64,000 bases of DNA from NCBI RefSeq assembly GCF_902652985.1, contig NC_047021.1:38874001-38938000 (forward strand), given 5' to 3'. The stretch is from Pecten maximus (taxonomy: Eukaryota). Shown piece after piece: positions 6,770 to 49,268 of this stretch. The notes beneath the pieces were generated by a model. It did no database searches. It saw only the letters and a program-made list of their open reading frames with translations, and was not told the origin of the DNA. Position 1 is the stretch's first letter, and every line of letters begins with the position of its first letter. The translations under genes were made by a program, and so were the position numbers.

Positions 6770-7099
6770 CTCCCTGTTTGGCAAGAGCCGGGTTAACCTT
6801 GACTTGCTGTTCCATTTTCGGATGCAGGAAGGTGTCTGCATCTTCTCCGAACATATCGTATAGTTGACTCTGATACCATTGTAACTCCTCCTTGCTTGGC
6901 TGCTGCCAATTCTTCTTGGCCTCCTTTGTATTTAAGTTGGAGGGAGTTCTAGACATCGGGGGTAGCGTTGCCTGGAATCCCCCGGACTTCCCAGCACCCG
7001 TTGCCTTGCTGAAATCATTTCCATTTCCAGGTTGGTCACTGTTGGAAGCCAATTTGGCATTCTTTTTCTTTTCCAAAAGGACAGCCTTTTTGTCTTCCT
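6770..7099 (-). CDS. Internal exon, 110 codons ((E)EDKKAVLLEKKKNAKL...VNPALAKQG), phase 1-1
   Basis: tttgtattttacag|AGGAAG...GGAG|gtgagt; 330 nt; GC-richer than flanks; lies within ORF 6741..7118. Confidence 0.9.
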
Positions 7100-7267
7100 C
7101 TGTAAAATACAAATTCAATTTTTACAATCCATGCAACTACCATGTCTTGTATGTGTGCCAATTTGGCATTCTTTTTCTTTTCCAAAAGGACAGCCTTTTT
7201 GTCTTCCTCTGTAAAATACAAATTCAATTTTTACAATCCATGCAACTACCATGTCTTGTATGTGTGC
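7048..7267. repeat. Perfect 109-bp tandem duplication spanning an exon/intron boundary (splice acceptor)
   Basis: 7048-7156 is repeated from 7157; acceptor AG at 7100-7101 is copied at 7209-7210. Confidence 0.95.
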
Positions 7268-10019: not shown

Positions 10020-10052
10020 TGTTTACATCAATGGTCACGTCTCCATGGAGAC
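10020..10052. promoter_or_regulatory. Candidate forkhead (TGTTTAC) plus palindromic X-box (GTCTCCATGGAGAC) pair
   Basis: Motif match only, in GC-richer unique sequence. Confidence 0.4.
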
Positions 10053-11449: not shown

Positions 11450-11522
11450 CCAATGATTCTTTACACTTCTTCTCAAGAGCTGCTTCCCGAGCATTTTTCT
11501 TGGCTTTTTCGCTTTCTCTTTT
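11450..11522 (-). CDS. Internal exon (KRESEKAKKNAREAALEKKCKESL), phase 0-1
   Basis: tttatctttccag|AAAAGA...CATTGG|gtaagt; 73 nt; phases join exon 34146-34310 to exon 6770-7099. Confidence 0.88.
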
Positions 11523-12616
11523 CTGGAAAGATAAAAAAATACTTAATAAAACAAATGATTTGATCAATATTAAAAGAAAGTTTTCTACTTTTTTAACAGA
11601 ATCAGCTGATAATTACGTGAGTGGATCTCTGATTCCACCAGATAGAACGGTAACTTGTTGAAATATCAGATCTAATAAGAAAAGTATTTCAATCCTTGGT
11701 AAATCACTCTATTTTATTGTTCTTTAAAGAACAAAGGTTTGTGATTCAATATTGAACATGATTCTTTTGGAGGTAAAAACATGATTATGACTGACACCCG
11801 CATCTTTCTCAAATCTTTTTATTTGAAATAGGACTTTTATTACATAATTTTTTTTCGATTAAACTTAATGCTATGTATACACCGAAATGCACGGGCGCAA
11901 TTCTAACAGGACAACGGGCTAGACAAACTGTGTTAATTATGATGCATATCATTGCACATTAAAAAAAAAACTGTCGTTTATTTAATTCAAAGCATAACAA
12001 TTATATATATTGAAATTTATAAATTGGGCAATTATTTAAATGATCCTTATTTTTTACAGTATGAATCCTGCCTGTCACTTAACTTGAACACAGACACCAA
12101 AGAAATCCTCCCCCCATGTTGACTTAAAATAACACAAGAATATCTTTATCACACATACGTTTTTCAATAGAGTTAGCTAGAGCTAATACGAGCTATTCGT
12201 GACGTTCATGCTTCCATAAACTGTAATATGTTTATAATGAAATGCGATAGTCCCTCAAGTTTTCAGTGTAAAGGATCTCATCATCTAGCAAACTTATATT
12301 GTTAAAGACTTGAAGGGAATGTGACCTTTGACCCATGACCCATGACCCAAGCTCTGTTTGGATGAGTCCAATAATATTTTATTTATCATATATGTTGTCC
12401 ACCATATCTAATAGTGGAACAGTCCAGCCAATTATGAAAATATTTTTTTTCTGGAAACACCCGACATTTATAAAATATTCAAATTATGAAGAAAACTTGG
12501 TTATAATCCTTATCTTTAAGCCCTATAGTCTGAATGAATTTAAGGATACAAGCACCTTTAATATATACGTTTAAATATATTAGAATCCCTTGCTTAAAAT
12601 AGTTATTGAGTAAAGA

Positions 12617-19035: not shown

Positions 19036-19932
19036 ATGTGAAGATCTAGTTTTTGTTGTGTGAAGATCTAGTTTTTGTTGTGTAAACATCCAGTTTTTAT
19101 CATGTAAACATCTAGTTTTTATCATGTAAACATCCAGTTTTTATCATGTGATTTTTTTTGTTTTTTATTGTGTTAATTAAAAACATCTTGTTTTTATCAT
19201 GTAAACATCTAGTTTCTATTGTGTAAACATCTACCATAGTTTTAAAATGTAAACATCAAGTTTTTTTTAATGAATTTTTTTTAATGTAAAACATCCAGTT
19301 TTATCATGATTTTTTGTTTTTGCTTTATTTTGTAAACATCAAGTTTTTATCAGGTAAAATCAAGTGTTTATCGTGTAAACATCCAGTTTTTATTGTGTAA
19401 ACATCCTGTTTTTATTGTGTAAACATCAACATTTCATTGCGTAAACATCCAGTTTTTATTGTGTAAACATCCTGTTTTTATTGTGTAAACATCAAGATTT
19501 CATTGTGTAAACATCCAGTTTTTATTGTGTAAACATCCAGTTTTATTGTGTAAACATCTAGTTTTTATTGTGTAAACTTCAAGATTTTATTGTGTAAACA
19601 TCTAGTTTTTATTGTGTAAACATCCTGTTTTTATTGTGTAAACATCAAGATTTCATTGTGTAAACATCCAGTTTTTATTGTGTAAACATCCAGTTTTTAT
19701 TGTGTTAAAATCCAGTTTTATTGTGTAAACATCTAGTTTTTATTGTGTAAACATCTAGTTTTTATTGTGTAAACATCCTGTTTGTATTGTGTAAACATCA
19801 AGATTTTATTGTGTAAACATCAAGATTTTATGGTGTAAACATCCAGATTTTATGGTGTAAACATCCTGTTTTTATTGTGTAAACATCAAGATCTTATTCT
19901 GTAAACATCTAGTTTTTACAATGTAAACATCG
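19036..19932. repeat. 22-bp minisatellite TTTTTATTGTGTAAACATCCAG (forkhead motif GTAAACA in the unit)
   Basis: About 30 GTAAACA copies by manual count. Confidence 0.95.
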
Positions 19933-21206
19933 ATCCAGTTTGAGTCTCTATTGCATAATCAATTGGAATTTCTTTTATTTTCTTTAAACTATATAAGTAC
20001 GATTAATTACCGGTGATCATCTAAAAAAGTAAGCTCTTTTTCAGAAAAGTGAACAGGTCCTATTGTGTTAATTGTATTGTGAAAATATAATCCTTTTAGA
20101 TTCACTTTACGGCTGATTTCTAGTTTTTTCAATGATTAATCAATACCCTTTGGACCCGAATGATCAGATCAGATCACAATCATATTCCAGGATATGTCAG
20201 AAAAACACAATTACACATTTCTAGATGAAACCTACTTCCACCAAACTGATGGATTTTCATAACATCATATTTACACATCGGTCCATTTACGTTGGAGTGG
20301 ATGTGAGGAAATTTAATTCTCCAGCCAGCGTACACAGGCATTATACTAAATCTGTCATTGAGCCGTACACACAACGGCCAACAGTTTATACCGGAGAATA
20401 ATTCCGTCCCCGAGGTATTTGGAACAATAAAGGTATCCCTGAATATTGTGTACTATCCTTCGGATGCGGCAGGACAGCCAGAAATACGCAGAACTGAATT
20501 ATCAATATGGTTATGGACGTTCCCGCACACCCTCGCGGATGTCTAAATGGAGGTTTGATTTAAGGGAGAGAGATACAAACTGGCGTGCATCCAGTGAACA
20601 GTATACAGAACCAAGCCGTCCGGACACTGTCAATGAATAAATGATTCAGAGTATTTGGTGAAATATGGCTATCAGTACCACACAAATGCCTACATTAGTC
20701 TGATAGTAGAAAAGCTAGGCAACAACGAGCAATTTTACAAGAGATTTTTCTGTGTTGTCTGCTCAGTGTGGTAAAAAATACTCAAAACCAGCGCAATAAA
20801 ACCCAGCAATTTTAGCTTGATGTAGAATTTTTAACAGAGAGGGAATTGAATAATTCATGAAAATATGCACCGGAATAGTCAACTTAAAAATATTTCTAAG
20901 ATATTTATTGACACTTCAATGTTAAAGGCATGTTGCCACTAGCTCGACAAACATTACATTCTTTCAGCTCAAACCATGCATATATATCTCAAACATTCTT
21001 ATCTTTCATCTTTCTGATTGGTGACCATCAAGTATTAAAAATTTGTAACAGCTAGTGCAAAGTATTATCATATGGCATAGAGTATAAAAAGATTAACGTA
21101 ACAGTAAATTGGTAGGATGCTCCGTCTTCTTTGGTCAAGGACTGACCTTCTTTGGTCCAGGGCTGACCATATTAGGCATCCTGGGTGTTGTTGACCAGTC
21201 CTTCTT

Positions 21207-21219
21207 GTTGCTAAGCAAC
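21207..21219. promoter_or_regulatory. Candidate RFX X-box GTTGCTAAGCAAC
   Basis: Two inverted GTTGCT half-sites with a 1-nt spacer; motif match only. Confidence 0.4.
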
Positions 21220-21844
21220 ACTGAAAAACTGATTTCAAATGGTGCTAGAGTATGTACATAGGAATCTAAGCACCAGAGGAAACCAGGACTTCAGTCGTAC
21301 AAAGGTTTCCGCGAGGATGTCCGCGATCTCTGTAGAATGCTACTTACATGGAACCTTAAACACAATATTTCTCATCAAATTTCATGCCCAGAAATATTTT
21401 TCTATCAACCATTCTCACAAATCTTTCCAACATTATCTTTCAAACAAACCATTCTCATAAACAGTTCTCACATTTTCTTTTTAAAACCAACCATTCTCAC
21501 AAATATTTCTGAAATGCATAACTGATCCAACTCTTTCAGCTAGTGAATAACCAACAGATGTTCTAACCTCTAAAACACATAAAATGTTCTGTGTCTATAA
21601 CACATTTAAACAAAAACAATAATTACAGCTTGCACAAATATCTTAAAAATAAATAAATTGCCCTTGTAATAAATCAATTTCACATCCACATGCATATCCC
21701 ATTAAACTGCTATCTAGGTCAATTTGATCCTAAACAATCAGTTTTTACAAATCTGTCAGACAAAATATGTCGCTACTATATCACTTCCAACAAAATCTTT
21801 CCAATTAGAAATTGAAAATGATAGTCATGGAGTCAGTGCTTATA

Positions 21845-22230
21845 GAAAGACACAGGAGACTGTTGTTGTCATGGTGATATAACTATTGGTCTATATATAG
21901 AATCAGGGGAGTGTTGTTGTCATGGTGATAACTCTTGGTCTATATATAGAATCAGGAGAGTGTTGTCATGGTGATAACTCTCGGTCTATATAAAGACACT
22001 AGGGACTGTTGTTGTCATGGTGATATAACTCTTGGTCTTTATAGAGACATAGGGGACTGTTGTTGTCATGGTGATGTAACTATTGGTCTATATATAGACA
22101 CTGGGGACTGTTGTTGTCATGGTGATGTAACTATTGGTCTATATATAGACACTGGAGACTGTTGTTGTCATGTTGATATAACCGGTCTATATATATATAT
22201 AGACACAGGGGACTGTTGTCACGGTGACAT
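21845..22230. repeat. ~51-bp minisatellite containing X-box GTTGTCATGGTGAT and palindrome GTCTATATATAGAC
   Basis: 8 units, 6 with the exact 14-mer. Confidence 0.93.
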
Positions 22231-22399
22231 AACAAGACACATCTTTTGCCAATGTTATGGCTTAGAGTAATCAATCTGGGACAGTTTCATCACTACAATA
22301 AAGGCAATTTTAGAAAATCTTCCCAGTAAAATCTAGAATCGCATCTCCTCTGTTTGTGTTTGTTATATACGAATGTAAGCCTGATTACAATAATAACTT

Positions 22400-22820
22400 C
22401 ATGTGTGATTGTGTGTGTTATAAATAGAAATGTGTTATAAATAGAAATGTGTGTTATAAAAAGAAATGCATGTGAGTGTGTAATAAAAAAAATGTGTGAC
22501 TTTGTGTATTCTATAAATAGAAATGCATGTGAGTGTGTGTAATAAAAAGAAATATGTGTGACTGTGTGTGTGTGCTATAAATAGAAATGCATGTGAGTGT
22601 GTTATTAATAGAAATGTGTGTGGCTGTGTGTATTCTATAAATAGAAATGCATGTAAGTGTGTAATAAAAAAATGTGTGACTGTGTATTCTATAAATAGAA
22701 ATGCATGTGAGTGTATTATAAATAGAAATGTGTGTGATTGTGTGTGTATGCTATAATTATATAGAAGTGCATATATGAGTGATTCCATGTCAGCATGTAT
22801 ATTATACATAGAAATGTGTG
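22400..22820. repeat. Irregular minisatellite with CTATAAATAGAAATGCATGTGAGTGT units
   Basis: Repeated TATAAATAGAAATG core. Confidence 0.85.
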
Positions 22821-24841
22821 TAAAATACCACACATGTATGACCTGTACACACCAAACATCACAAACACCAGGTGCACATGCCCAACCACACACTTACAGT
22901 ACATTACACATAATTTATTCCAAAAAACATATTTTACTTTTAAGACTGATTTCACATAAAAACAGCAAAAGTGAGAAAACATAGGCATGCCACACCATAT
23001 AAGCAATATACACAGGGCAGATTATACTGCTTTAAACTTCAAAGATACCTGTTGCTGGCCAAGCGAAGTTAGAATCATCCTGACCGATTATAAGACTCCC
23101 AGCTGCCAGTTTTCTAGGAAATCTGAGGTTGCAACATAACAAACCCTACGGTGCTTGTTAAGAGGTTGTCCGAGATGTCTCCTCAACTTTCCTTCCCGTC
23201 TGCTGTAATTGTCAGAACATGGAGATTCTCCGGCAATGGTTGTTGTATCACTACATGACAATGGCTGACTGATATATTAACCACTAGTCAGCCATGCAGA
23301 GAGTTCTGTTGCTGCTGGTGCTGGAAGCTTCCCTGGTTGTCGTCACAACGCTTGCCAATATTGGAAACTAAACTACAATTCTGCTTCAACTGGGTCACCT
23401 ATAGACTGAGAATGACACCAAGGATGTCCACAATCCAAAAACTCAACAACAACATATAGGTGTCAACATTTACATATGTCTGCGCGCATGGACTCCCATA
23501 CGTACACATATGACGTACATAATACGTTTTTTGCGCAATAAGTCATATATACGTACGTAGCTGTGTTCCTATAGCTTCCTTGAAATGAATTGGTACGGAG
23601 GAGGAACCGTTGACAAGATATATAGATCCGTACTGAGGAAGGATAAATAGTGCAATCAATGGCTGCTTGATCCACACATGCTATTTGTAGTGGAGAAGTC
23701 CTCGGGATGAGCTTGACGATACCTCGGCCAGTGTTCAATCCAACCGAAGGCGGTTTCCACAGCCTCAGTCACATAATCAACACACGATATCAACCTACAA
23801 TTAATTCCCTATTACTCTGCTCCAGGGCCAATCAAGGAATACAAACCAACTCAGCGAGCCCTAGGAAATTCTAACAAATAAATTAGGATTGTATTGGATT
23901 CCCTGGTCATGCGTTATAAAACAAATGACCACTGCTAATGTTCAACGTTATCTTTGTGATCTTTTTGCACCAATAAATAAAAAAAACTAAATAACTATAT
24001 ATATATATATATAAGAATATACATATATAAGAATGTGTTTCACAGAATACCAACTTCAGAAATCAGTATAGACAAGAACACATCAGGTAAGTTTCCTTTC
24101 CAATGGAGTATCAACTGATTCCAGCAGTATTTCTGAAGGCTAAATGTGCTCAGTATGACCTGTGTATTCACACTTATACGGTCGTACTGGTGAAGACGTC
24201 CTGTCCTCGAAGGCAGATCTTCTCCAGCCAAACTGTGTCCACCACTGGACAGTTTTACGTGTTGATAATACAGGCCCCGGGACCTCGTAAAAACCACAGT
24301 GAGAACAATAAAAGGAGACAGGATCTCGCGAGTCTAATTTGATCACAATGCTGACCTCGGACTTATTGTTTAGCTATTATCAATATAATAAGTTATCAGA
24401 TGGGGCTTTATGAAGCTTCGATATTGGATTGGCGAACTTGACTTGGTATATTACACAGAATGTACTTAAAACAAAAACCTGTCCAACCGATATCCACGGA
24501 TCCATAATCATAACAAAAGGCTTTTAACGCATAGCTTTACTGGGCCTAAAAGGACAGGCTGGTTTTAGATCAGTTAATTATTGTATACAGATATCTTTTG
24601 TTTTTGTCATTTCAATGAGTACACACTAGCAACAAGGGCAGATAACTCTAAAAAATAGTCCTGTTACTTATATTGTATCAGGAAATAATAAAGCATTTAG
24701 CACATAATGTACATTAACTTTAAGTCTATATCAAGGTAAATACATATTTATCTGGGTAAATTTACAAGAAATTTCAAATCAGCATTCCTTTTTTTTAATA
24801 TTTTATAATGTTTGTACAAAATATGTGGGTATTATATCTCT

Positions 24842-25430
24842 AACAAGAGATACCAGAGGGATCTTGGTGCCCACCATTTTATAACCTTTATTGAATCTTT
24901 GTAAGACTGATCTTTTCTCCAATTTTCTCTTCTTCCTCTTAATCATTTGAAAACCAGAGGAACCTATATATTAAATATAAGAAAGATCCATCCAGAATTC
25001 TCTGAGAAATAGGGTTAACAAACGTCAACCAATACAAGGGAAATCAAAATGAAATTCAAGAAATATTCCATGAAGAACTTTCTAAGATAACAAAATTTAA
25101 CTGATAAAATTCAAAATGGCCACCTGACTGCCATCTTGTTTTCAGATCAGTCACAAAATGGACCAGGCATAACTAGGTACAAGGGGAGCCTACAGGCAAA
25201 CATTTAGGAAGATAAATGAAGAATAACATTAACAATCTCAATTCAACTGTCAAAATTCATAATGGCTGCCTGTTGGCAATCTTGATTTCTGATCAGTCTC
25301 AAAAGTGAACATTCACGACTAGGGACCTGCAAGTGGAACCCACATATGAAGTTTGACAACGATGTTCCAGTGCTTCTCCCGAAATATCAATAACAGGAAA
25401 TGTTAAAGGACTGACGGATTCGAGTTGCAC
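24842..25430. mobile_element. HINE-like element with internal ~146-bp repeats
   Basis: AACAAGAG terminus; two diverged copies of AAAATGGC...CATCTTG...GATCAGTC near 25106 and 25252; residual GGACTGACGGA. Confidence 0.6.
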
Positions 25431-25554
25431 ACATTATGAATGCATATACAATCTCTTAGGAATCATGCTTTCATTAAAATATTTCTAAACCTTCAGTTTT
25501 ATCAACATCATAATAAGCAGATTAAGCCATCAACAACTTTCAAAAGTGCTATAT

Positions 25555-26045
25555 ATCTAGTCAACAACAATGAATTGTGCTAAACGTCTAGTCAGCTAGA
25601 AAACACTGAACTTTACGTGCCAAATCAAGTCGAAAAACATATTGAACTGTACTAAATCTTGTCGAAAAACAATTAACTGTGCTAAATCTTGTCAAAAAGC
25701 AATTAACTGTGCTAAATCAAGTCAAAAAACATTGAACTATACTTAATCGATCTAGTCAAATAACAATTAACTGTGCTATTAATCTTGTCAAAAAACAATT
25801 AACTGTGCTAAATCTGGTCAAAAAACTATTAACTGTGCTAAATCAAGTAAAAAAACATTGAACAATACTAAATCTAGTCAAATAACAATTATCTGTGCTA
25901 AATCTAGTCGAAAACAATTAACCGTGCTAAATTTTGTCAAAAAACATTTGAAACTGCTAAATCTAGGCAAAAAACAATTAACGGCTAAATCTAGGCAAAA
26001 AACAATGAACTGCTAAATCCAGTCGAAAAACAATTAACTGTGCTG
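25555..26045. repeat. ~29-bp minisatellite AAAAACAATTAACTGTGCTAAATCTAGTC
   Basis: About 16 diverged units. Confidence 0.9.
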
Positions 26046-27008
26046 AACAGGTTTAATATGTTGATATATCAGTCAATATGTATACTTTATTCTTATAAGC
26101 TTACTGAATCCCTTTCTCCATTTAGAGTGTTTTCACTGGTATAGTGTACATATTGTACACGGAAAGGCGATGGGAGAAATTCAAAACACCGAAAATAATT
26201 CAAGGAGTACTGTAACTTAAACTATATATAGTTACGACCTATATGATTGTGTTAAGTTTTGATCAACTAAAAATTATCAACTCTAGTTTTGATCAATTAA
26301 AAATTATCAACTCTACAATCCAGTATAGATGCATCATGAATAGAAAGGTGAAATTCTCAGAAAAAAATAATTTTTTATCACTATGCAGAAATGCCAGGCT
26401 TTATTTAGAAGTACTTAGATGTAGATACACAGTATGTTGTGATAGGCAGATTAGAGTTATATAATCTCTGTGTGCATTTGTGTAATGAGCTATTTTCAAG
26501 GAATATGTCTTTGGGGAATAAATCTTTGCATATCCTTGAAGTGAAAAAAGTTTGATAGAAAATGTTAATTACATAATGTCCGAAGGATTTTAGCTACACA
26601 GTCTTTCTGAAATAAGTCATTAAAATCAATATATATAGCACCTGAATAATGGATAATTTTGAAATATGCAGAAAATACAAATATGGTGTTGTGAACTAGC
26701 TGCACAGGGAAGTCAGAATAATTTTATATTTTGATATACAGGTTAAATGATACATTTTATCTAATTTTCCGTTAGCTGCATTTTTCTTCATTTTTGTTTT
26801 GTTTTTATTTTACCCAATGTAAATATACAAGTAAAATAGTCTTGTGCTGACAGAGATAAATTATGAAATTGAGTTAATTATATAGCATTTCAAAACTGCA
26901 TACCATATATGCTGCCAATATGGCTCTTAAAAATATCATAAAAGATGGGTAAAAATAAAATCCAAGGGGAGACAACTCTAATGAAAAACTAAATTAATTT
27001 TTATTTAA

Positions 27009-28245
27009 CCCTTTGCCACATGTAAGCGCCTCTGGACGCCTTTACCCCTTGCCACATGTAAGCGCTTCTCGACGCCTTTGCATTATCTCCATGTAAGTGC
27101 TTCTCGACGCCTCTACGTTATCTCAATGTAAGCGCCTCTCGACGCCATGCCGGTTCGGTAAACTTAGACATGGAAAATCCCTTGATTGAGAGCGACACCT
27201 ATCTGGAAATCCCTGATACTATTTTAAGAAGATATCAATGCATCGACCAATCAGATTTGTACACGTCATTCATACGAAAGTTTTTGAATAAATTAACCTA
27301 GAAAGTGTGAGTCATGAGTGTAGAAAAGTGTGACAACAACGAGGCGTGATGGCGGCTGTGGCTACGATTTTGCGCGACGTTTTTGACGACGATGATGATA
27401 ATTTAGAGTTCGATGGCTTTGGACCTGAATACATTGAGTCAGATATTGATCTTAACGATGTTCTAAATGAACTGTCAACAGATAACGAGTCCGAAAATGA
27501 GGACGAACGGCAACTTGTTGTACTGCCGCCATTACGCAATGTTGACCGAGATTTTTCGCCGATCACAGTAAATGATTTTGTTAGGGAAACGGGGCCAGTA
27601 CTTCCAGAAACTTTTGATGTTGATACTGCAAGTCCCATTGATTATTTCTACCTTTTCTTCAATGAGAATCAGTTTTCCACCATAGCTCGACACACTAATA
27701 ACTACGCTCGCTGGCAATTGAAAAACGAAAGTAGATTTGACCCAAAATGGTCGGATACACATTCCTTCGTCGCGACATCGGATTTAAAATATTCTAGGCT
27801 TAAGCCTGAACTGTTGAAATACTCTTGTGAAAACTTTGAAAATTCAGTTTGCTTCATTTGGGAGTTAATGTTGAATCATTTCATGTACAGGAATTCAATG
27901 AATTATAAATTACATTGTCAAAATATTTTGAAATTTGTCTGTTCTGTTTGTATACAGCTGATTTCGTGGTTATGTGTTGTTGGTTTTATAAAGAAAATAG
28001 CACAGAATTAAAATTTAAGAAATTCTGAACATAATTCTAACTTACTAAAAATGTCTAAAACAACTATTTCACTTTCAAAATTAGGTTTAGAAAAATTAAT
28101 CAAAACAAAGCTTGATTTCTCAAAAACTGCCATTGAGATGGTGTATGTATATTTCAGTCAGCGCGATAATGTTGCATTGCAACAATGTATCTTTGCACTA
28201 TTGGCACAGAGTGCTGAAGTGTTATAACCTGCATGTGGCAAAGGG
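27009..28245 (+). mobile_element. Internally deleted (non-autonomous) piggyBac transposon, 1237 bp
   Basis: TTAA target duplication at 27005-27008 and 28246-28249; 14-bp perfect TIR CCCTTTGCCACATG; four left subterminal repeats (ATGTAAGCGCYTCTCGACGCC-like); transposase fragment inside. Confidence 0.93.
27349..27760 (+). pseudogene. Truncated piggyBac (PGBD-like) transposase N-terminus
   Basis: Acidic N-terminus, then SPIDYFYLFFNENQFSTIARHTNNYA...KWSDT, typical of the start of the piggyBac DDD domain; similarity stops near 27760, before the catalytic residues. Confidence 0.85.
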
Positions 28246-31200
28246 TTAAAACCTTTCATCCCTCAGTTACTTTTGTAGGTTCTTCCATCCTTTGAGCTGG
28301 ACTAATCCATATTGAAACTTTAGGGGTATTAAAAAGAGAAACAATATAACCTTCTGCCGTTATATTTTTCAATTCTAACCCTCGCAAATATGTCGAAAGA
28401 ATTGTGAAAATAAGTACACGTGGAAATGGACCGTTTCCAAATGTCCTTTGAGAGAAGCATCTGCCATAAAGTCAGTACGATGATCAATAAATAATGGTAC
28501 CTCCATACCAAGTACATCTCTGTTATATAAAAACCACAGGCCTAACACATTACTTTAACAAGCTTATAGGGCACCTCGTATAGTTCCTTGATGAAATCAT
28601 GTTCGGTTTGTGAAAGAAAAACGCAAGTACTCACTCCAACCATTATGTATGTTACAGTCATCGACAAAAAAGCCAATAAACGCATTTACCAAATCTGATT
28701 AGAGAAACCAGTCCGCCAATGTGACTGCAGAGGCCGAGTATCAGTTTGGTATGACAAAAACTACGCACATATGGGTACTCCTCCGGGGACATAGCAAACC
28801 TATATCTTCATATTTTGACCATTGCACGGTTTTTACACTTCCTTTTTTTCTGACAGTAGAAAAAAATCAATGAAACCGCTTGTTTAAAATCCTGTTAGTT
28901 TTATAAGCAATTTTGTCAGGTTCTATAAAATGTTTTTTGGGGTTAATATATCTGTTGAACTGTTATCTTATTATAGAGCTTTTTGCACTGAGAGCATTCT
29001 GCTCAATTATGATCGCACTAACTGAAGCTCATGTATACTGTTTCTATAACAAGAATTTTGGGTGTTGAAATTCCTCATTGTCCTTATTTGTTTCAATTCA
29101 GTTGTGTTCCAAGAACCAAGATGGTCAAGTTTGAAATTTTGAAATTTAGAATTCAGCATCAGTACCTGAGCAATTCTTTAATACTTTATGTAGCTTGTTC
29201 AAAAGCTACACATTCTTAGGTATAATTTTCATTGCAAATTTTCCCATCTACGTTCAAGCAAACAGACAATGATTAAAGCTCTAAGTAAAAAAATTCAAGT
29301 ACAATTCATAAGCACGTTAATTTTTTTTGGCATACCTTCATATCAAAAGGCCTTGTGTTTATAAATATATCCACAATGGCATGTTGCAACACAAGTTACT
29401 CCGAGGCCACTTACATCATTAATATCTATTAATAAGTCACTTGGGACTCCGGTGACACGTAATACGGTTGACAAATATTATACCAATACCTATTACTGTA
29501 ATTTGTTACATCAGGTTTCAGATAGAAATAGATATCTACACCATTCCAGAAATCCAAACATTTTCATCTGAATCATAAACTTATAAGTCATCAAATTTGC
29601 ATATTCATAAGTCATTGAATTTACATATTTATGTTATAAATGCATATTTATAAGTCATATGATTTACATATATGTATATACACACATATTGCTCTCACAT
29701 ATAGTGTTTTAGATCTATCGGCTTGTATGCTATTACTACTGATCTCAGGAGAACTATTTTTAAAATCAATTTTTCAATTTATTTTTCATTTTTTTATTTT
29801 CTCAGCACATATAATGCAGAAAGGAATCAAAGATTGAGAAGCTTTGGGATAATTTTAAAATTTAAAAATCTAAATTTTAATATATTCAACACATAATAGA
29901 TTTTACTGTTGAATACTAACATCACAGAGAAAATGTCAGTAATACTATTTCTACATATCATAAAAATGTAATTTGCTTAATACTAGATAAAAGCAATTAA
30001 ATTAAGATGACATTAATTTGAAAACATTTTGTTTTAATGGCAATTGTGATAAATACCTATCGCTACCAGATAGTATGATAAACACTGTTTGACAATTGAA
30101 CGGTACAGAATTTCCTCCACGGATAACACGATGCCAGTTCAACATCCGTAAGGTTTGTTAGCGGACACTCTGCAATGGGTCTAGAATTTCCCTCCAATTT
30201 TTGTATTCCTCTCTCTAACTATCCATCACTGTACCGCACTATTGCCGTCAGTGACAGCTTGGGTGATGACGGCTGGGAAGACTCGGAGTCTGTGACATTA
30301 CGAGTCAAATCCCGTAAGTAGGATCAGTTTCAGACCATTATCGGTATCAAGCAATCTTTGTGAAATTTTATGAAGACGTTAAAATTACCAATTCACCAGC
30401 TTCTTAGGGTAGAAAAAGTCATTGATTTTTAAAATCAAGGACAAACACTGGCATTTTTCTGACACAGTGTCATATAAAATGACTACATATCTAAGTCTAA
30501 GACGATCTTAACAGTGGGCCTAATGCATTGGGGTTTTTTTCCAGTTCTCCCGATACTACAATGCATTAAACTTTGAGGTAAGAAGCGACAATTTATGTGA
30601 AGCTTCCTAGCATGAGCGGTTTAAGCAGGCATATTGGTGACTGGGTCATGTTTAAAGTGCACATAGACTTGTATAGGCAGATGGTGACCCATATCTTAAA
30701 AAGCTTCCTCTTTGCACTAAAATTTCAAAAACAGTAAATTTGGATACTGCGATATTTCAAGATTAAATCAAGCAGCATTTACTGAAAATAGCATGTCTTC
30801 TTTTACATCTTTTTCTTACATGAAAGTGAAATAGATGAATACAAATATTTTGTTTGTTTGAAGAACTGAACACTGGAACCTGGGGCTGCCTTGTTAATTG
30901 AACAAATTTGTCTCAAGCCTATATTAAGACTTGTGGGTGTAAGTAAGATCTTAGTGATGAAGTCATACCATCTCTCGTGACATAGCGTGATAGATATAGC
31001 TGTAAACCTATTTGATCTTAAACTGTTAAAGTTGAGGATATCAACTACAAAAATTAAAACCACAAAAATTCTTCACGACCTTAGAACCATGAAGTCACAG
31101 GGAACTCGCACACAAAATCTCAGATGGTGAGTCTATGGCATTTTAGGATAAAAAATTTCATGAATTTCAGTTGCAACAAACTGACAAGAGTTCAAGGTCG

Positions 31201-31566
31201 TGAACCAAAACCTTGGAATCTGAAAGCATTAGAGAGGATGATGATGAATTAACTATATGATTCGGTAACTTTGTGATAAAGTCCTGTTAATCAACAAAAT
31301 CAGATAAAATTTCCTATTGTTTTAAACCAATTTTAAACCAATTTCTCTGCTGATTTTTAGACAGCAGTGACTTAATTCTTCATGCAAATATCAAGCAGAC
31401 AGTCTTCATTTCAGATGGTTCCATCCTCTTCGGTTCCTGATGATAAATTCTCTACAAGAGCACTGATTTCAAATGGTGCTAGACCCCTTAATATACTAAA
31501 TCTACCCACCACTTGAGACCAGCCCCATGAGGAGATGATATATGGTCCAATCTGACTTTGGAAACA

Positions 31567-32255
31567 ATTTCCATGACAACCATTAAACCTTCTTTGGTAA
31601 CAAAATCTCCATGACAACCATTAACCTTTCATTGGTTACAAAACAAAATCTCCATGACAACCATTAACCTTTCATTGGTTACAAAACAAAATCTCCATGA
31701 CAACCCTTAACCTTACTTTGGTTACAAAACAAAATCTCCATGACAACCATTAAACCTTTTTTGGTAACACAATCTCCATGACAACCATTCAACTTTCTTT
31801 GGTTACAAAACAAAATCTCCATGACAACCATTAACCTTTCTTTGGTTACAAAACAAAATCTCCATGACAACCCTTAACCTCTCTTTGGTTACAAAACAAA
31901 ATCTCCGTGACAACCATTAAACCTTCTTTTGTTACAAAACAAAATCTCCATGACAACCCTTAACCTCTCTTTGGTTACAAAACAAAATCTCCGTGACAAC
32001 CATTAAACCTTCTTTTGTTACAAAACAAAATCTCCATGACAACCCTTAACCTCTCTTTGGTTACAAAACAAAATCTCCATGACAACCCTTAACCTCTCTT
32101 TGGTTACAAAACAAAATCTCCATGACAACCCTTAACCTCTCTTTGGTTACAAAACAAAATCTCTGTGACAACCCTTAACCTCTCTTTGGTTACAAAACAA
32201 AATCTCCGTGACAATCACTAATCCTTCTTTGGCAATGAAATCTCCATGGCAACCT
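31567..32255. repeat. 43-bp minisatellite containing X-box ATCTCCATGACAAC
   Basis: 17 units: 11 exact 14-mers, last unit ATCTCCATGGCAAC at 32240. Confidence 0.95.
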
Positions 32256-33738
32256 TTAAATTTTCTGGTTATAGACGAAACTCTTTCAGACAACTATTAT
32301 ACTTTCTTTGGTTATGTAAATCTCAAAAAACAAAACTGGCATTACAAGATAACCATTTCATGACTTCATCATAAGTTCATGATAATCTTTGCTTCCAAAT
32401 ACAATTTTGTGATATGAGCTTTCTACAGATATATAAGTAAACTATCTTTCTTCTCAACATTGTTCTACACAAAAATAAAGCTTTCTTCACATATCTGTCC
32501 CTTATATCAATAAAGTCTTAAAACAATAATAACACATGATTCGTGTTTCATAAAACTAAGATAAGCTAATGTACTGAAGTCATTCAATGAACCTCCAATA
32601 ATTTTCCAACACTTGTCTTTTAAAATTTCATTTGTTTCTGAAGTACATGGACATGCTTGCCACACATTCAATGGACATTAATCCTGTTGGAGTTCATGTA
32701 AACTCTTAACATATGACCAAAACCCAGATCTCTACTGACAGACAGCGAATAACACTTTCCAATATGTTCATGAAATATGCATACATAAGGCAGCTTTCTT
32801 GCATGTTGACAGTGCAAATCAAATCTTTTTATTTTCCTTTTTTTCTTCAACTCAGTTGTTAATTTTGCAAGCTAGGCATGTTTCTCATGAATATGGTTCT
32901 ATAACCCTGCTCGGCAATGATACATTAAACATTCATGATTGTGTGCAAATATTTTTCTACAGATGAAGTTTAGTGCAAGAGGTTTGTGAGCTGGTGGTGC
33001 CTTAAAGTCGAATTTGTAGCAAAAAAAAAACAGATGACACAAAACCCTGTGAACCTGGAAGCCAGTTCGGCCACTGAAGAGGCTACTAGGTCAAGCAAAT
33101 GTCTACATTCTGAAGCAAATTTCCGAAATATATTTCAAGACATTACCTTAAATTATATATAGATATAGGGATTCAAAGGAATTCAAGATTATTATTACTT
33201 TTTAAAAAATTTAATTTCATAATTGTTAGCTATTAATCCATAGACTACTTCTTCCCAATTAACATAGGTTATGAAGTTACTCAAAAAAATAATAAACTGT
33301 TGAAGTGAAAAAATAGCAAATTGACCTATTTTTGAAGGTATAGAGAGATGTTCACAACAATAGCAAAACAACTTTTCTCAGAATGAAATAAAAATTCAGT
33401 GAATTTGATTGAAATTTCCCCAGGAAGATAATTGTTTAACGAGACAAAAGCAGTGACAGAAATTAAAAGCTGCAGGATACAGGATCAAACTAGTTCTCAA
33501 CTGGAAACAAACGACCACACTCGGTCACTAATCATAGATGTTATATGATCTGTAAAGTAAAACAGTTTGAGACGGACAGAAAAAATATAAATCCTACCTA
33601 AGTTGGTAATGACAAATCAGATTGTTAAAAACATAATTGATATTAGATGACTATACAAAACGCACACAAGATATTAGCACCTTTCAGAACAAATTGAGAA
33701 ATTGACAAAGTAGAACCAAATATGTATATTAATTGCTG

Positions 33739-34145: not shown

Positions 34146-34310
34146 CTGTAACTGTAGTCGATCGGCTTCCTCTCTCCTCTGCTGGGCGTACAGATCTTGT
34201 TTCTGTATAAGCTGTTTTTGGAGTGATAACTTCTCAAGGAGTTGTTCGTATTGGTCGTGTCGTACCTCACTCTTGGCCAAATCCCATTTTTCTGACAGAT
34301 GTTCATGGCG
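34146..34310 (-). CDS. Internal exon, coiled-coil-like (RHEHLSEKWDLAKSEVRHDQYEQLLEKLSLQKQLIQKQDLYAQQRREEADRLQLQ), phase 0-0
   Basis: ttttatttcattgcag|CGCCAT...TTACAG|gtaaat; 165 nt; E/Q/K/L-rich helical composition. Confidence 0.9.
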
Positions 34311-34848
34311 CTGCAATGAAATAAAAGAATCATAAAAAATCAATTAAAATTCATTTGTTCGAATTTCAATTTCAGTATTTTTCAGGTCCATTAAATTTTC
34401 AGTTTTCATTAATATAATAATAATAACAACAGACACTACTGAAAATATTCTTTTCCAAACCTTGAAAGTTAGAACTTTTCTGTAAAAGAATTAGATACTT
34501 GAAGGAGCTTTGCTGAGCAAAAAAATGTTGTACTTCGAATAATAACTAATCAATTTATACAAAGTGAATTTTGTGAATTCTCCGTGCATGAATATATCAA
34601 ACATATGTTTTGCTTCAATGCTATACTAAATGACATACTGTCTTTCAGGGTAAAAAGAAAATTGGTTTTCAAAAATGTTTTTTTCTTTTGAGTACTAGAG
34701 TTTTGAAAATGTACTGGTTGAAAGATTGCTCCCAAAATAATCCTTAATTACAGTACATGTACATGTTTCAGTAGGTCATAAGCCTTCATATCATAACAAT
34801 TACATAATCTAAATTAGGCGCAATAGATTTGTAAAATTTCAAATTTAC

Positions 34849-39729: not shown

Positions 39730-39743
39730 GATACCATGGCAAC
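39730..39743. promoter_or_regulatory. Candidate RFX X-box GATACCATGGCAAC
   Basis: 13/14 match to the X-box consensus; motif match only. Confidence 0.35.
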
Positions 39744-46859: not shown

Positions 46860-47570
46860 CAGCTGACTCATAATCAAGGTATTTCTATTTTTCACTGTGA
46901 AATTTTTCCATAAATAATTTCTGGATTTTGACCTAGTAACAATTGTTGACCCTCATTACTTCGCCAATTACCGTAAGCTAGAAAAGAGCGAATTTTTACA
47001 GAATATAATGTACCAGAACTTGATATCATAAGCGATCCACCGTTCCCAGTCTTAAGTATTAGCCTTTTAATTCGCAAAATAAAGTTCCTGAGACCTATAT
47101 TACCTTCGCCAGAACTAGACAAACCAGTAAACAGATAAACATATTGCTTGTAGAAATTAACGTATCAACTTTCACCATATTCAAACGAGCGTGTTTTTTT
47201 CGTCATATTAGACCTCAGAATTTTATGCGTATTATTTGCTTGAAGATATTATCATATGCTACCTTTGACCCCAAGAAAGTCCCTCCCCATTTGTATGCCA
47301 TTAATATGACTTGGGACCTACACAAGTATAAACATCTAATTAACCCGGAGTAAAATCAATATACATTTATGATCTGCCTCAAACTGACGGTGAAAAGAAA
47401 TTTTTGCCGGAGAGGTTTATGCATGACTAGAGGTTCAGTGAACCGGTCCCAAGCTTTAAAATCAACTAGCGGTGTATAACGATAAAGTGCTTTCTGATAC
47501 ACATTCGGATGCAAATGAAGGTTGCTGGGATGTTGATAACCTATAAAAAAGGCCAGGTTCAACTAATAGT
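46860..47570 (-). pseudogene. Highly decayed non-LTR retrotransposon (L1/Tx1-like) ORF2 fragment
   Basis: Minus-strand peptides in the expected order: LVDFKAWDRF (RT DFxKAFD motif), FLGV (YLG motif), RIKRLILKTGNGGSLM (GGLG-like motif); many stops, frameshifts and deletions. Confidence 0.45.
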
Positions 47571-47879: not shown

Positions 47880-48872
47880 AGGGCGATTGTACAATACAAG
47901 TCCTAGGGCGATTGTACAATACTTATTTTGACAGTCCTAGAGTGATTGTACAATACCAGTTTTGACAGTCCTAGGGAGATTGTACAATACCAATTTTGAC
48001 AGTCCTAGAGTGATTGTACAATACAAGTCCTAGGGAGATTGTACAATACCAATTTTGACAGTCCCAGGGAGATTGTACAATACCAATTTTGACAGTCCCA
48101 GGGCGATTGTACAATACTTATTTTGACAGTCCTAGGGCGATTGTACAATACCAATTTTGACAGTCCTAGGGCGATTGTACAATACCAATTTTGACAGTCC
48201 TAGGGCGATTGTACAATACCAATTTTGACAGTCCTAGGGCGATTGTACAATACCAATTTTGACAGTCCTAGGGCGATTGTACAATACCAATTTTGACAGT
48301 CCTAGGGCGATTGTACAATACCAATTTTGACAGTCCTAGAGTGATTGTACAATACCAATTTTGACAGTCCTAGGGCGATTGTACAATATCAATTTTGACA
48401 GTCCTAGAGTGATTGTACAATACCAATTTTGACAGTCCTAGGGCGATTGTACAATACCAATTTTGACAGTCCTAGGGCGATTGTACAATACCAATTTTGA
48501 CAGTCCTAGGGCGATTGTACAATACCAATTTTGACAGTCCCAGGGCGATTGTACAATACCTATTTTGACAGTCCTAGAGTGATTGTGCAATACCAATTTT
48601 GACAGTCCTAGGGCGATTGTACAATACCAATTTTGACAGTCCTAGAGTGATTGTACAATACCAATTTTGACAGTCCTAGGGAGATTGTACAATACCAATT
48701 TTGACAGTCCTAGAGTGATTGTACAATACTTATTTTGACAGTCCTAGGGCGATTGTACAATACCAATTTTGACAGTCCTATAAGGAGATTGTACAATACC
48801 AATTTTGACAGTCCCAGGGCGATTGTACAATACCTATTTTGACAGTCCTAGGGCGATTGTAAAATACCAATG
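47880..48872. repeat. 34-bp minisatellite GATTGTACAATACCAATTTTGACAGTCCTAGGGC
   Basis: About 29 units. Confidence 0.95.
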
Positions 48873-48904: not shown

Positions 48905-49268
48905 TAAGGTGATTATATTCACCCATTTTGACAGTCCAGTGAGATCGATCACCCATTTTGACAGTCCAGTGAGATCGATCACCCATTTTGACAGTCCAGG
49001 GAGATCGATCACCCATTTTGACAGTCCAGAGAGATCGATCACCCATTTTGACAGTCCAGGGAGATCGATCACCCATTTTGACAGTCCAGGGAGATCGATC
49101 AGCCATTTTGACAGCCCAGGGAGATCGATCACCCATTTTGACAGTCCAGGGAGATCGATCACCCATTTTGACAGTCCAGGGAGATCGATCACCCATTTTG
49201 ACAGTCCAGGGAGATCGATCACCCAATTTGACAGTCCAGGGAGATCGATCACCCAATTTGACAGTCCT
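48905..49268. repeat. 30-bp minisatellite GATCGATCACCCATTTTGACAGTCCAGGGA
   Basis: About 12 units; shares ATTTTGACAGTCC with the adjacent array. Confidence 0.95.

What the first reader, a model, noticed from the sequence alone, without database searches (positions are those of the whole stretch)
19036..32255. Candidate repeat-built RFX + forkhead regulatory system inside one intron
Seen: within the 22.6-kb intron, two minisatellites with otherwise unrelated units (51 bp at 21845-22230; 43 bp at 31567-32255) share a 14-mer at 13/14 identity in opposite orientation (ATCACCATGACAAC vs ATCTCCATGACAAC). Both fit the RFX/DAF-19 X-box consensus RTHNYY-WT-RRNRAC exactly. A third array (19036-19932) has about 30 forkhead cores GTAAACA, and single X-boxes occur at 10039, 21207 and 39730. 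Established: RFX and FoxJ1 co-regulate motile-cilia genes, many of which encode coiled-coil proteins. Inference: local tandem amplification has turned single TF sites into homotypic clusters acting as copy-number-tunable enhancers or TF sinks, for this or a neighbouring gene. Caveat: X-box-like minisatellites may be common in mollusc genomes regardless of gene function.
Basis: partly seen in the sequence, partly recalled or inferred. Interest (0 to 1): 0.8.

Follow-up and report, generated by a model that had tools for sequence, protein, structure and literature searches.

The report
X-box-like minisatellites beside two mir-29 genes
Two real minisatellites in a scallop intron belong to a genome-wide class of repeats built on an RFX-type (X-box) core and each lies just upstream of a mir-29 microRNA gene, but no evidence supports a combined RFX plus forkhead cilia switch.

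Summary
The 51-bp, 43-bp and 22-bp arrays, the inverted shared 14-mer (13/14) and 31 GTAAACA cores are all present, inside a 22.6-kb intron of a Pecten maximus TSGA13-domain gene on the minus strand.

- The forkhead array is at chance level (P about 0.1) and is absent from the orthologous Argopecten intron.
- The array X-boxes fit only the most degenerate consensus.
- X-box-cored repeats are a genome-wide class. The window's core occurs as tandem pairs at 12 loci against 0 for the control. Perfect GTTRCCATGGYAAC palindromes occur 1,431 times against 11, in unrelated minisatellites and in dispersed, probably transposon-borne, repeats.
- Minisatellites are everywhere: 38 arrays covering about 30% of a random 200 kb.

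New here: the intron holds two mir-29 precursors. The 43-bp array begins 39 bp and the 51-bp array 548 bp 5' of a hairpin. Both arrays are orthologous in Argopecten irradians and absent in the ark clam Tegillarca, which keeps the mir-29 pair. Array divergence equals the intron background, and the core is not clearly more conserved than the rest of the unit.

Best reading: old, nearly neutral, locus-specific minisatellites of a motif-seeded class. Any regulatory role would more likely concern mir-29. An earlier scan note reported a transposon-borne X-box array elsewhere in this genome.

The parts
31566..32255 (+). 43-bp minisatellite of about 16 copies. The core ATCTCCATGACAAC reads on the + strand, so it is antisense to the host gene. 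The array starts 39 bp 5' (in gene direction) of the first mir-29 hairpin.
   Evidence: TRF; 13 pattern hits; unique in the genome. Orthologous 36-bp array at L044:69989-70205 in Argopecten.
21841..22219 (-). 51-bp minisatellite of 7.5 copies. The core ATCACCATGACAAC reads on the - strand, which is the gene strand. It lies 548 bp 5' of the second mir-29 hairpin.
   Evidence: TRF; 6 exact cores; unique in the genome. Orthologous 48-bp array with the same core at L044:75817-76229.
19036..19931 (+). 22-bp AT-rich minisatellite (40 copies, 78% matches) carrying 31 GTAAACA cores. It is Pecten-only.
   Evidence: Chance test P about 0.1. Its 14-mer is found in tandem only here plus one other site. 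No match in the Argopecten intron.
31457..31527 (-). mir-29 precursor, first copy in gene order.
   Evidence: Rfam RF00074, 55.6 bits against a gathering score of 46.7. The 3p arm is invariant in 6 hairpins of 3 species and the hairpin is conserved.
21223..21292 (-). mir-29 precursor, second copy in gene order.
   Evidence: Rfam RF00074, 62.9 bits.
21207..21219 (.). Palindromic 13-mer X-box (1-nt spacer) lying 3 nt 3' of the second mir-29 hairpin.
   Evidence: Fits GYTRYY N1-3 RRHRAC. Identical in Argopecten within a roughly 75-bp block of about 93% identity. Only its GCAAC end is kept in Tegillarca.
27005..28250 (+). Young high-copy element of about 1.25 kb that holds the start of a piggyBac-type transposase ORF (27346-28011). 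It is an independent insertion between the arrays.
   Evidence: More than 4,000 first-look candidates, 97-99% identical copies. Weak DDE_Tnp_1_7 hit. Absent from the Argopecten intron.
34146..34313 (-). Host-gene exon (aa 91-146 of the Argopecten orthologue), the 5' border of the 22.6-kb intron.
   Evidence: tblastn.
11451..11534 (-). Host-gene exon (aa 143-170), the 3' border of the intron.
   Evidence: tblastn.
10039..10052 (.). Single palindromic 14-mer that fits the degenerate X-box pattern, in the next intron.

Best explanation
The three arrays are ordinary locus-specific minisatellites in an intron of the Pecten maximus TSGA13-domain gene (LOC117330799), in a genome where such arrays are everywhere. 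The two X-box arrays belong to a genome-wide class of scallop tandem repeats whose only shared part is an RFX-type palindrome or half-palindrome of the form GTTRYCATGG... .

The likely history is as follows. A short X-box-like sequence seeded local tandem duplication by slippage or unequal exchange. This happened in the pectinid lineage, after its split from ark clams and before the Pecten/Argopecten split. The arrays have since drifted at the neutral rate of the intron, with re-expansion of the 43-bp array in Pecten.

Each array sits just 5' of one of two ancient intronic mir-29 genes. If the arrays do anything, the most likely role is as clusters of weak RFX-type sites acting on the mir-29 genes or their host transcript. 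The forkhead array is an unrelated, Pecten-only, AT-rich minisatellite that contains GTAAACA by chance.

Shown: the anatomy, uniqueness of the arrays, the genome-wide class, orthology with Argopecten, and the mir-29 genes. Inferred: the seeding mechanism, near-neutrality, and any binding.
For: Minisatellite background:
- 38 arrays cover about 30% of a random 200 kb.
- The window has 19 arrays.

The arrays are unique loci:
- Searches find no other copy.
- The only high-copy repeat in 19-34 kb is the 1.25-kb piggyBac-derived element.

Genome-wide class:
- The core GTTGTCATGGWGAT occurs 321 times against 112 for the reversed control.
- As tandem pairs it occurs 61 times against 0, at 12 loci with periods of 22-54 bp and unrelated remainders.
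- Perfect GTTRCCATGGYAAC pairs: 76 against 0. Single sites: 1,431 against 11.
- One of 38 random arrays carries a strict X-box.
- Core arrays are enriched for a second GTWAC half-site, 6/13 against 7/73, P=0.004.
- Control cores from other arrays stay in their own array.

Orthology and neutrality:
- The intron is collinear with Argopecten. 24% aligns at a mean of 75.6% identity, and the arrays align at 75-78%.
- The core ranks 9/48 and 3/43 among 14-column windows for conservation when the units are anchored away from it.
- Tegillarca has the mir-29 pair but no X-box arrays.

Forkhead array.
Against: - The two X-box arrays are the only two of about five sizeable Pecten arrays in the intron that are shared with Argopecten.
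- They are also the only two of 27 arrays in the 113-kb Argopecten locus with at least 2 X-box hits.
- Both lie directly 5' of a mir-29 paralogue. At roughly one X-box-pattern array per 0.4 Mb, that placement is very unlikely by chance.
- The mir-29 duplication is far too old for a 14-mer to survive neutrally in both flanks.
- The exact 14-mer of the 51-bp array is the consensus in both species.

These points fit selection on the arrays, or a shared seeding sequence near mir-29, better than pure drift.
Confidence: 0.55

Rival explanations
1. The two arrays are functional homotypic clusters of RFX sites that act as a promoter or enhancer for the two intronic mir-29 genes, or for the TSGA13-domain host gene. 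Selection has kept them in pectinids.
For: - Each array lies 39 bp or 548 bp 5' of a mir-29 hairpin on the gene strand.
- Both arrays are present at orthologous places in Argopecten, while the other arrays turned over.
- The core is the most conserved window when the units are anchored on it.
- The Argopecten 36-bp unit carries near-canonical GTTACCATGG elements.
- TSGA13 is a testis gene family, and RFX2 controls spermiogenesis genes (PMC4498915, listed).
Against: - The copies fail all restricted X-box consensuses.
- About half of the Argopecten copies have lost the pattern.
- Array divergence equals the intron background.
- There is no clear extra conservation of the core once the anchoring bias is removed.
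- Tegillarca has no such arrays although it keeps the mir-29 pair.
- No Rfam family lies near 11 other core arrays.
- No binding or chromatin data exist.
Confidence: 0.2
2. The core is the recognition sequence of a mobile-element protein, for example a transposase with an RFX-like winged helix, or is otherwise transposon-derived. The arrays would then be relics or by-products of that element's activity rather than host RFX sites.
For: - Perfect X-boxes are enriched 130-fold.
- Many occur in dispersed 2-3-copy arrays of 127-bp period, and a dispersed element of about 68 bp with two 16-bp palindromes occurs at 14 or more loci.
- RFX DNA-binding domains are found at about 8 loci, two of them in long open frames of 301 and 526 aa.
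- Unchecked earlier notes s1-785411 and s1-786537 point the same way.
Against: - The window's arrays are unique and have no repeated flanks.
- Only the 14-bp core is shared between arrays, with no longer element-derived sequence.
- The RFX-domain loci could not be fetched, so no transposase was seen here.
Confidence: 0.13
3. One reading: RFX arrays plus a FoxJ1 array form one copy-number-tunable regulatory system or transcription-factor sink for a motile-cilia coiled-coil gene.
For: - X-box-like and forkhead-core arrays lie in one intron.
- RFX and Fox factors co-regulate cilia genes (PMC3414849 and PMC10393296, listed).
Against: - The forkhead array is at chance level, is not conserved and lies 3' of the mir-29 genes.
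- The host gene is not shown to be ciliary.
- X-box-pattern arrays number in the thousands genome-wide, with only 1.9-fold enrichment of the degenerate pattern.
Confidence: 0.05
4. Pure coincidence: two unrelated minisatellites happen to share a 14-mer that happens to fit a loose consensus.
For: - There are many arrays per window.
- The consensus is loose.
- The scan reads very many windows.
Against: - Shuffled units give 0.07 shared pairs and 0.05 X-box arrays per window.
- The same core recurs at 10 other loci against 0 for the control.
- Both arrays are conserved in Argopecten next to mir-29.
Confidence: 0.05

Closest known systems
Minisatellite families with a shared core (Jeffreys-type core sequence in human minisatellites)
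   Same: Many independent arrays have different unit lengths and unrelated remainders, yet share one short core.
   Different: Here the core is an RFX-type X-box palindrome or half-palindrome, not a G-rich chi-like motif. No link to recombination was tested.
RFX/DAF-19 X-box promoter motif of ciliary genes
   Same: A 14-bp imperfect palindrome with the same degenerate consensus. Perfect palindromes occur elsewhere in the genome.
   Different: Functional X-boxes are single, promoter-proximal and conserved as motifs. These are intronic and tandem, and they fail the restricted consensuses. Binding is untested.
Homotypic clusters of transcription-factor sites, and factor motifs spread by transposons (for example CTCF sites on SINEs)
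   Same: Many copies of one factor-like motif in a short stretch, with dispersed repeat families that carry the motif.
   Different: The window's arrays are unique local amplifications, not transposon copies.
mir-29a/b cluster next to TSGA13 at human 7q32.3
   Same: Two mir-29 paralogues are linked to a TSGA13-domain gene.
   Different: In bivalves the pair lies inside an intron of the gene. In mammals it lies beside the gene, with KLF14 between them (PMC1865561).

Membership tests
RFX X-box (functional RFX binding site) | Fits the degenerate 14-bp consensus RTHNYYWTRRNRAC | tested here: met
   19 exact hits in the two arrays.
RFX X-box (functional RFX binding site) | Fits a restricted consensus (GYTRYY N1-3 RRHRAC, RTNRCC N1-3 RGYAAC, or GTHNYYATRRNAAC) | tested here: not met
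   0 array copies fit the last two consensuses and 1 decayed copy (22215) fits the first. The single site at 21207 does fit (consensuses from PMC2375033).
RFX X-box (functional RFX binding site) | Promoter-proximal position upstream of a ciliary gene | tested here: not met
   The arrays lie deep in a 22.6-kb intron of a TSGA13-domain gene. They are, however, 39 bp and 548 bp 5' of the mir-29 hairpins.
RFX X-box (functional RFX binding site) | The motif is conserved between species more than its surroundings | tested here: inconclusive
   The arrays are orthologous in Argopecten, but their identity equals the intron background. The core ranks 9/48 and 3/43 when anchored elsewhere. The arrays are absent in Tegillarca.
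RFX X-box (functional RFX binding site) | Bound by an RFX protein | not testable with these tools
   No ChIP, CUT&Tag or EMSA data. RFX DNA-binding domains exist in the genome.
Forkhead (FoxJ1) site cluster | Forkhead core present above chance and conserved | tested here: not met
   31 GTAAACA cores, but 1 such array against 0.10 expected, P about 0.1. No counterpart in Argopecten.
Locus-specific minisatellite | Head-to-tail units of 10-100 bp at a single locus | tested here: met
   TRF; genome searches find only the window's own copies.
Transposon-borne or subterminal repeat array | The array and its flanks recur at other loci, or the arrays bound a mobile element | tested here: not met
   The arrays are unique. 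There is no flank homology between them. The piggyBac-derived element between them is only 1.25 kb.
Core-sharing minisatellite class (X-box core) | The same core occurs in independent arrays with unrelated remainders, far above a control | tested here: met
   12 loci, 61 pairs against 0. Canonical palindrome: 76 pairs against 0. Control cores are confined to their own array.
mir-29 precursor (RF00074) | Score above the Rfam gathering score, a conserved hairpin and an invariant mature arm | tested here: met
   62.9 and 55.6 bits against 46.7. Six hairpins in three species share an invariant 3p arm and 19 pairs.

The most novel reading that the evidence does not exclude
RFX-type palindromes may act as seeding cores for tandem duplication across the scallop genome. 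This could work through a tightly bound RFX, or a transposon-encoded RFX-like protein, that stalls replication or nicks DNA. The result would be thousands of X-box-cored minisatellites. A subset would have been kept as RFX-responsive promoter arrays for both mir-29 paralogues in pectinids.
Probability: 0.15. Interest if true: 0.75.

Novelty: new variant of a known kind. Interest (0 to 1): 0.45.

Why it matters
The local claim of a repeat-built RFX plus FoxJ1 cilia switch shrinks to two old minisatellites and one array that carries forkhead cores by chance.

Three things found on the way could matter.
- A transcription-factor palindrome serving as the shared core of otherwise unrelated minisatellites, with perfect sites enriched 130-fold. 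This could give a handle on how minisatellites are born, or on how mobile elements spread RFX sites. Full-text searches found no paper that links X-boxes with tandem repeats.
- Conserved arrays directly 5' of both mir-29 paralogues are a concrete, testable candidate for intronic microRNA regulation in a mollusc.
- The linkage of mir-29 with a TSGA13-domain gene from bivalves to mammals is a deep microsynteny.

Tried and rejected
1. Arrays as subterminal repeats of one large transposon around the piggyBac-like ORF. Rejected: the repeated element is only about 1.25 kb, the arrays are unique, and the flanks share no inverted homology.
2. Arrays as an inverted segmental duplication. Sensitive blastn found no flank similarity beyond the two mir-29 hairpins.
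3. Arrays derived from the 3p and 5p arms of mir-29, which would explain the inverted cores. Unit-shuffle P values of 0.002-0.02 looked promising, but unrelated real minisatellite units score as high or higher against the hairpins. Rejected.
4. Extra conservation of the core. It is the top window when units are cut at the core, but that cut is biased. Ranks of 9/48 and 3/43 result when units are cut elsewhere. Inconclusive.
5. Read laying on 30500-33500. Short-read contigs of other individuals break inside the array, and low-depth runs that may be RNA cover only sequence to the right of it. This says nothing on copy number or expression.
6. The protein atlas gave nothing for the exon ORF.
7. 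More species. The Mizuhopecten and Ylistrum loci were not delivered because the gene range exceeds 100 kb, and several oyster and mussel isoforms were not on record.
8. A wider random sample.
Exons were mapped by tblastn with orthologues only.

Full report
OBSERVATION

TRF reports a 22-bp array at 19036-19931 (40.5 copies, 78% matches), a 51-bp array at 21841-22219 (7.5 copies) and a 43-bp array at 31566-32232 (15.7 copies). The pattern RTHNYYWTRRNRAC has 24 hits in the window against 6.4 in shuffles. Six are exact ATCACCATGACAAC on the minus strand in the 51-bp array, and 13 lie on the plus strand in the 43-bp array. GTAAACA occurs 31 times in the 22-bp array. Of the three single X-boxes, 10039 fits the pattern. 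The site at 21207 is a 13-mer palindrome with a 1-nt spacer. The site at 39730 has one mismatch.

CONTEXT

The window is G000:C7:38874001-38938000 of a 918-Mb genome. The host protein is Pecten maximus LOC117330799, on a contig of exactly the length of C7. Orthologues of about 600 aa carry a C-terminal Pfam TSGA13 domain (30.3 bits, cut-off 27). tblastn with the Argopecten irradians orthologue places exons on the minus strand at 34313-34146, 11534-11451, 7100-6768 and further down. The 22.6-kb intron is therefore real.

HOW COMMON ARE SUCH ARRAYS?

Twenty random 10-kb pieces of the genome hold 38 minisatellites that cover about 30% of the bases. This window, with 19 arrays, is typical. Extrapolating gives on the order of 10^5 arrays in the genome.

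Shuffling the units of the window's arrays gives 0.05 X-box arrays per window against 3 observed, one of which is a consensus artefact. It gives 0.10 forkhead-core arrays against 1 observed, P about 0.1. The forkhead array is not above chance. Its 14-mer occurs in tandem only in its own array and at one other site.

A GENOME-WIDE CLASS

The shared core is not a local oddity.
- GTTGTCATGGWGAT occurs 321 times against 112 for the reversed control.
- As tandem pairs 10-40 bp apart it occurs 61 times against 0. This is at 12 loci, ten of them besides the two here. Periods range from 22 to 54 bp and the remainders of the units are unrelated.
- A control core from another array of the window is confined to its own array.
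- The perfect palindromic X-box GTTRCCATGGYAAC occurs in tandem pairs 76 times against 0. At least eight of these loci are independent arrays with unrelated remainders. A dispersed element of about 68 bp with two 16-bp palindromes accounts for 14 or more further loci.
- As a single site the perfect palindrome occurs 1,431 times against 11. Many of these sites lie in dispersed 2-3-copy arrays of 127-bp period. I infer these are transposon-borne but could not read them.
There are about 19 separate arrays in the first 8 Mb of C1. That is roughly one per 0.4 Mb, about half of which is expected by chance.
- One of the 38 random arrays carries strict X-boxes.
- Core arrays are enriched for a second GTWAC half-site, 6/13 against 7/73, P=0.004.

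What the arrays share is the footprint of an RFX-type site and nothing longer. Full-text searches found no paper that joins X-box or RFX with minisatellites or tandem repeats.

LOCAL ORIGIN

Both arrays are unique in the genome. The only high-copy repeat in 19-34 kb is an element of about 1.25 kb at 27005-28250, with 97-99% identical copies and more than 4,000 first-look candidates. It holds the start of a piggyBac-type ORF. The flanks of the two arrays share nothing except one 60-nt stretch. That stretch turned out to be the key to the locus.

THE mir-29 GENES

The shared stretch is a mir-29 precursor. Rfam RF00074 matches 21223-21292 (62.9 bits) and 31457-31527 (55.6 bits; gathering score 46.7), both on the gene strand. 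The 43-bp array begins 39 bp 5' of the first hairpin, and the 51-bp array lies 548 bp 5' of the second.

The same pair lies in the orthologous 22.5-kb intron of Argopecten irradians (L044:70430-70500 and 77001-77070). It also lies in the same intron of the ark clam Tegillarca granosa (L045:42404-42477 and 46865-46929). The 3p arm is invariant in all six hairpins and the stem is kept.

In mammals TSGA13 and the miR-29 cluster are neighbours at 7q32.3 (PMC1865561), so this linkage is ancient.

The X-box at 21207 lies 3 nt 3' of the second hairpin. It is identical in Argopecten within a block of about 93% identity. In Tegillarca only its GCAAC end remains, at the same offset. I infer that its conservation reflects the pri-miRNA flank rather than RFX binding.

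ARE THE ARRAYS CONSERVED?

Yes, as arrays.
- The 51-bp array matches a 48-bp array with the same core at L044:75817-76229.
- The 43-bp array matches a 36-bp array at L044:69989-70205. Each unit there holds two X-box-like elements, one of them close to GTTACCATGG, and decayed copies run on towards the hairpin.
- The forkhead array, the 30-bp array at 25617 and the piggyBac-derived element have no counterpart. Argopecten has four large arrays of its own.
- In the 113-kb Argopecten locus only these two of 27 arrays carry at least 2 X-box hits.
- Tegillarca has no X-box array 5' of either hairpin.

The arrays therefore arose in the pectinid line before Pecten and Argopecten split.

IS THERE CONSTRAINT ON THE MOTIF?

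Not clearly.
- 24% of the intron aligns to Argopecten at a mean of 75.6% identity, and the arrays align at 75-78%.
- When units are cut at the core, the core is the most conserved 14-column window. That cut favours the core.
- When units are cut elsewhere, the core ranks 9 of 48 for the 51-bp array (both species) and 3 of 43 for the 43-bp array.
- About half of the Argopecten copies have lost the pattern.
- The array copies fail every restricted X-box consensus of Laurencon et al. (PMC2375033). That paper also reports that matches to the degenerate consensus do not predict RFX control.

MECHANISM

My best reading (0.55) has four parts.
- An X-box-like sequence seeded tandem duplication at these two places, as at many others in this genome.
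- The arrays are old and drift nearly neutrally.
- The 43-bp array re-expanded in Pecten (89% matches, 16 copies, against 74% and 6 copies in Argopecten).
- The forkhead array is unrelated.

The placement of both arrays directly 5' of the two mir-29 paralogues is the main fact this reading does not explain. It keeps alive the rival that they are RFX-type promoter or enhancer arrays for mir-29 (0.2).

A transposon-linked origin of the core (0.13) rests on three things. These are the dispersed repeat families, the RFX DNA-binding domains in two long open frames, and two unchecked earlier notes of this scan.

Pure coincidence gets 0.05.

LIMITS

- Mizuhopecten and Ylistrum loci could not be fetched.
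- Read laying was uninformative.
- No binding, chromatin or transcription-start data were available.
- The host gene was handled exon by exon.

Noticed in passing
window 21223-21292 and 31457-31527 (- strand); L044:70430-70500, 77001-77070; L045:42404-42477, 46865-46929: A pair of mir-29 precursors sits in the same intron of the TSGA13-domain gene in Pecten, Argopecten and the ark clam Tegillarca. In human and mouse, TSGA13 and the miR-29 cluster are neighbours at 7q32.3 (PMC1865561). This looks like a very old microsynteny.
   Followed up: partly
window 27005-28250: A young element of about 1.25 kb with 97-99% identical copies on nearly every chromosome and more than 4,000 first-look candidates. 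It carries the N-terminal part of a piggyBac-type transposase ORF and a short 35-bp repeat at its left end, and is probably a recently active non-autonomous piggyBac derivative.
   Followed up: partly
G000 C1:1646732, 2745374, 4101003, 6747466, 9585042, 9615579, 14455952 (not fetched): Perfect X-box palindromes recur in 2-3 copies exactly 127 bp apart at many dispersed loci. This suggests a mobile element that carries a 127-bp tandem repeat with an X-box in each unit.
   Followed up: no
G000 C2:40769231, C5:753946, C5:24154314, C10:25019171 and at least 10 more (not fetched): A dispersed element of about 68 bp made of two 16-bp palindromes (GGTTACCATGGTAACC) around a conserved spacer of about 38 bp, found in both orientations.
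   Followed up: no
G000 C9:17498926 and C10:26191091 (not fetched): RFX DNA-binding domain matches (34-37 bits) lie inside long uninterrupted frames of 526 and 301 aa, unlike the exon-sized matches at the other six loci. They are candidates for intronless or transposon-linked RFX-domain genes.
   Followed up: no
L024-L043 (random 200 kb of the genome): Minisatellites with units of 12-238 bp cover about 30% of a random sample. Three of the twenty 10-kb pieces are almost wholly one array.
   Followed up: partly
window 47899-48871 and 48919-49267: Adjacent 34-bp and 30-bp arrays share a stretch of about 20 bp, so neighbouring arrays can be related by descent with remodelled units. The same holds for 21841 and 22455, which share a 14-mer at 13/14.
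   Followed up: partly
L045:46629-46865: In Tegillarca a 118-bp tandem duplication abuts the 5' end of the second mir-29 hairpin. It contains TCATGGAGATT, an 11-mer also found in the core of the scallop 43-bp array, which lies beside the other paralogue. This is unexplained.
   Followed up: no
window 7048-7267: The perfect 109-bp duplication overlaps the 5' end of the exon at 7100-6768. tblastn finds a second, weaker copy of the exon start at 7209-7132.
   Followed up: partly
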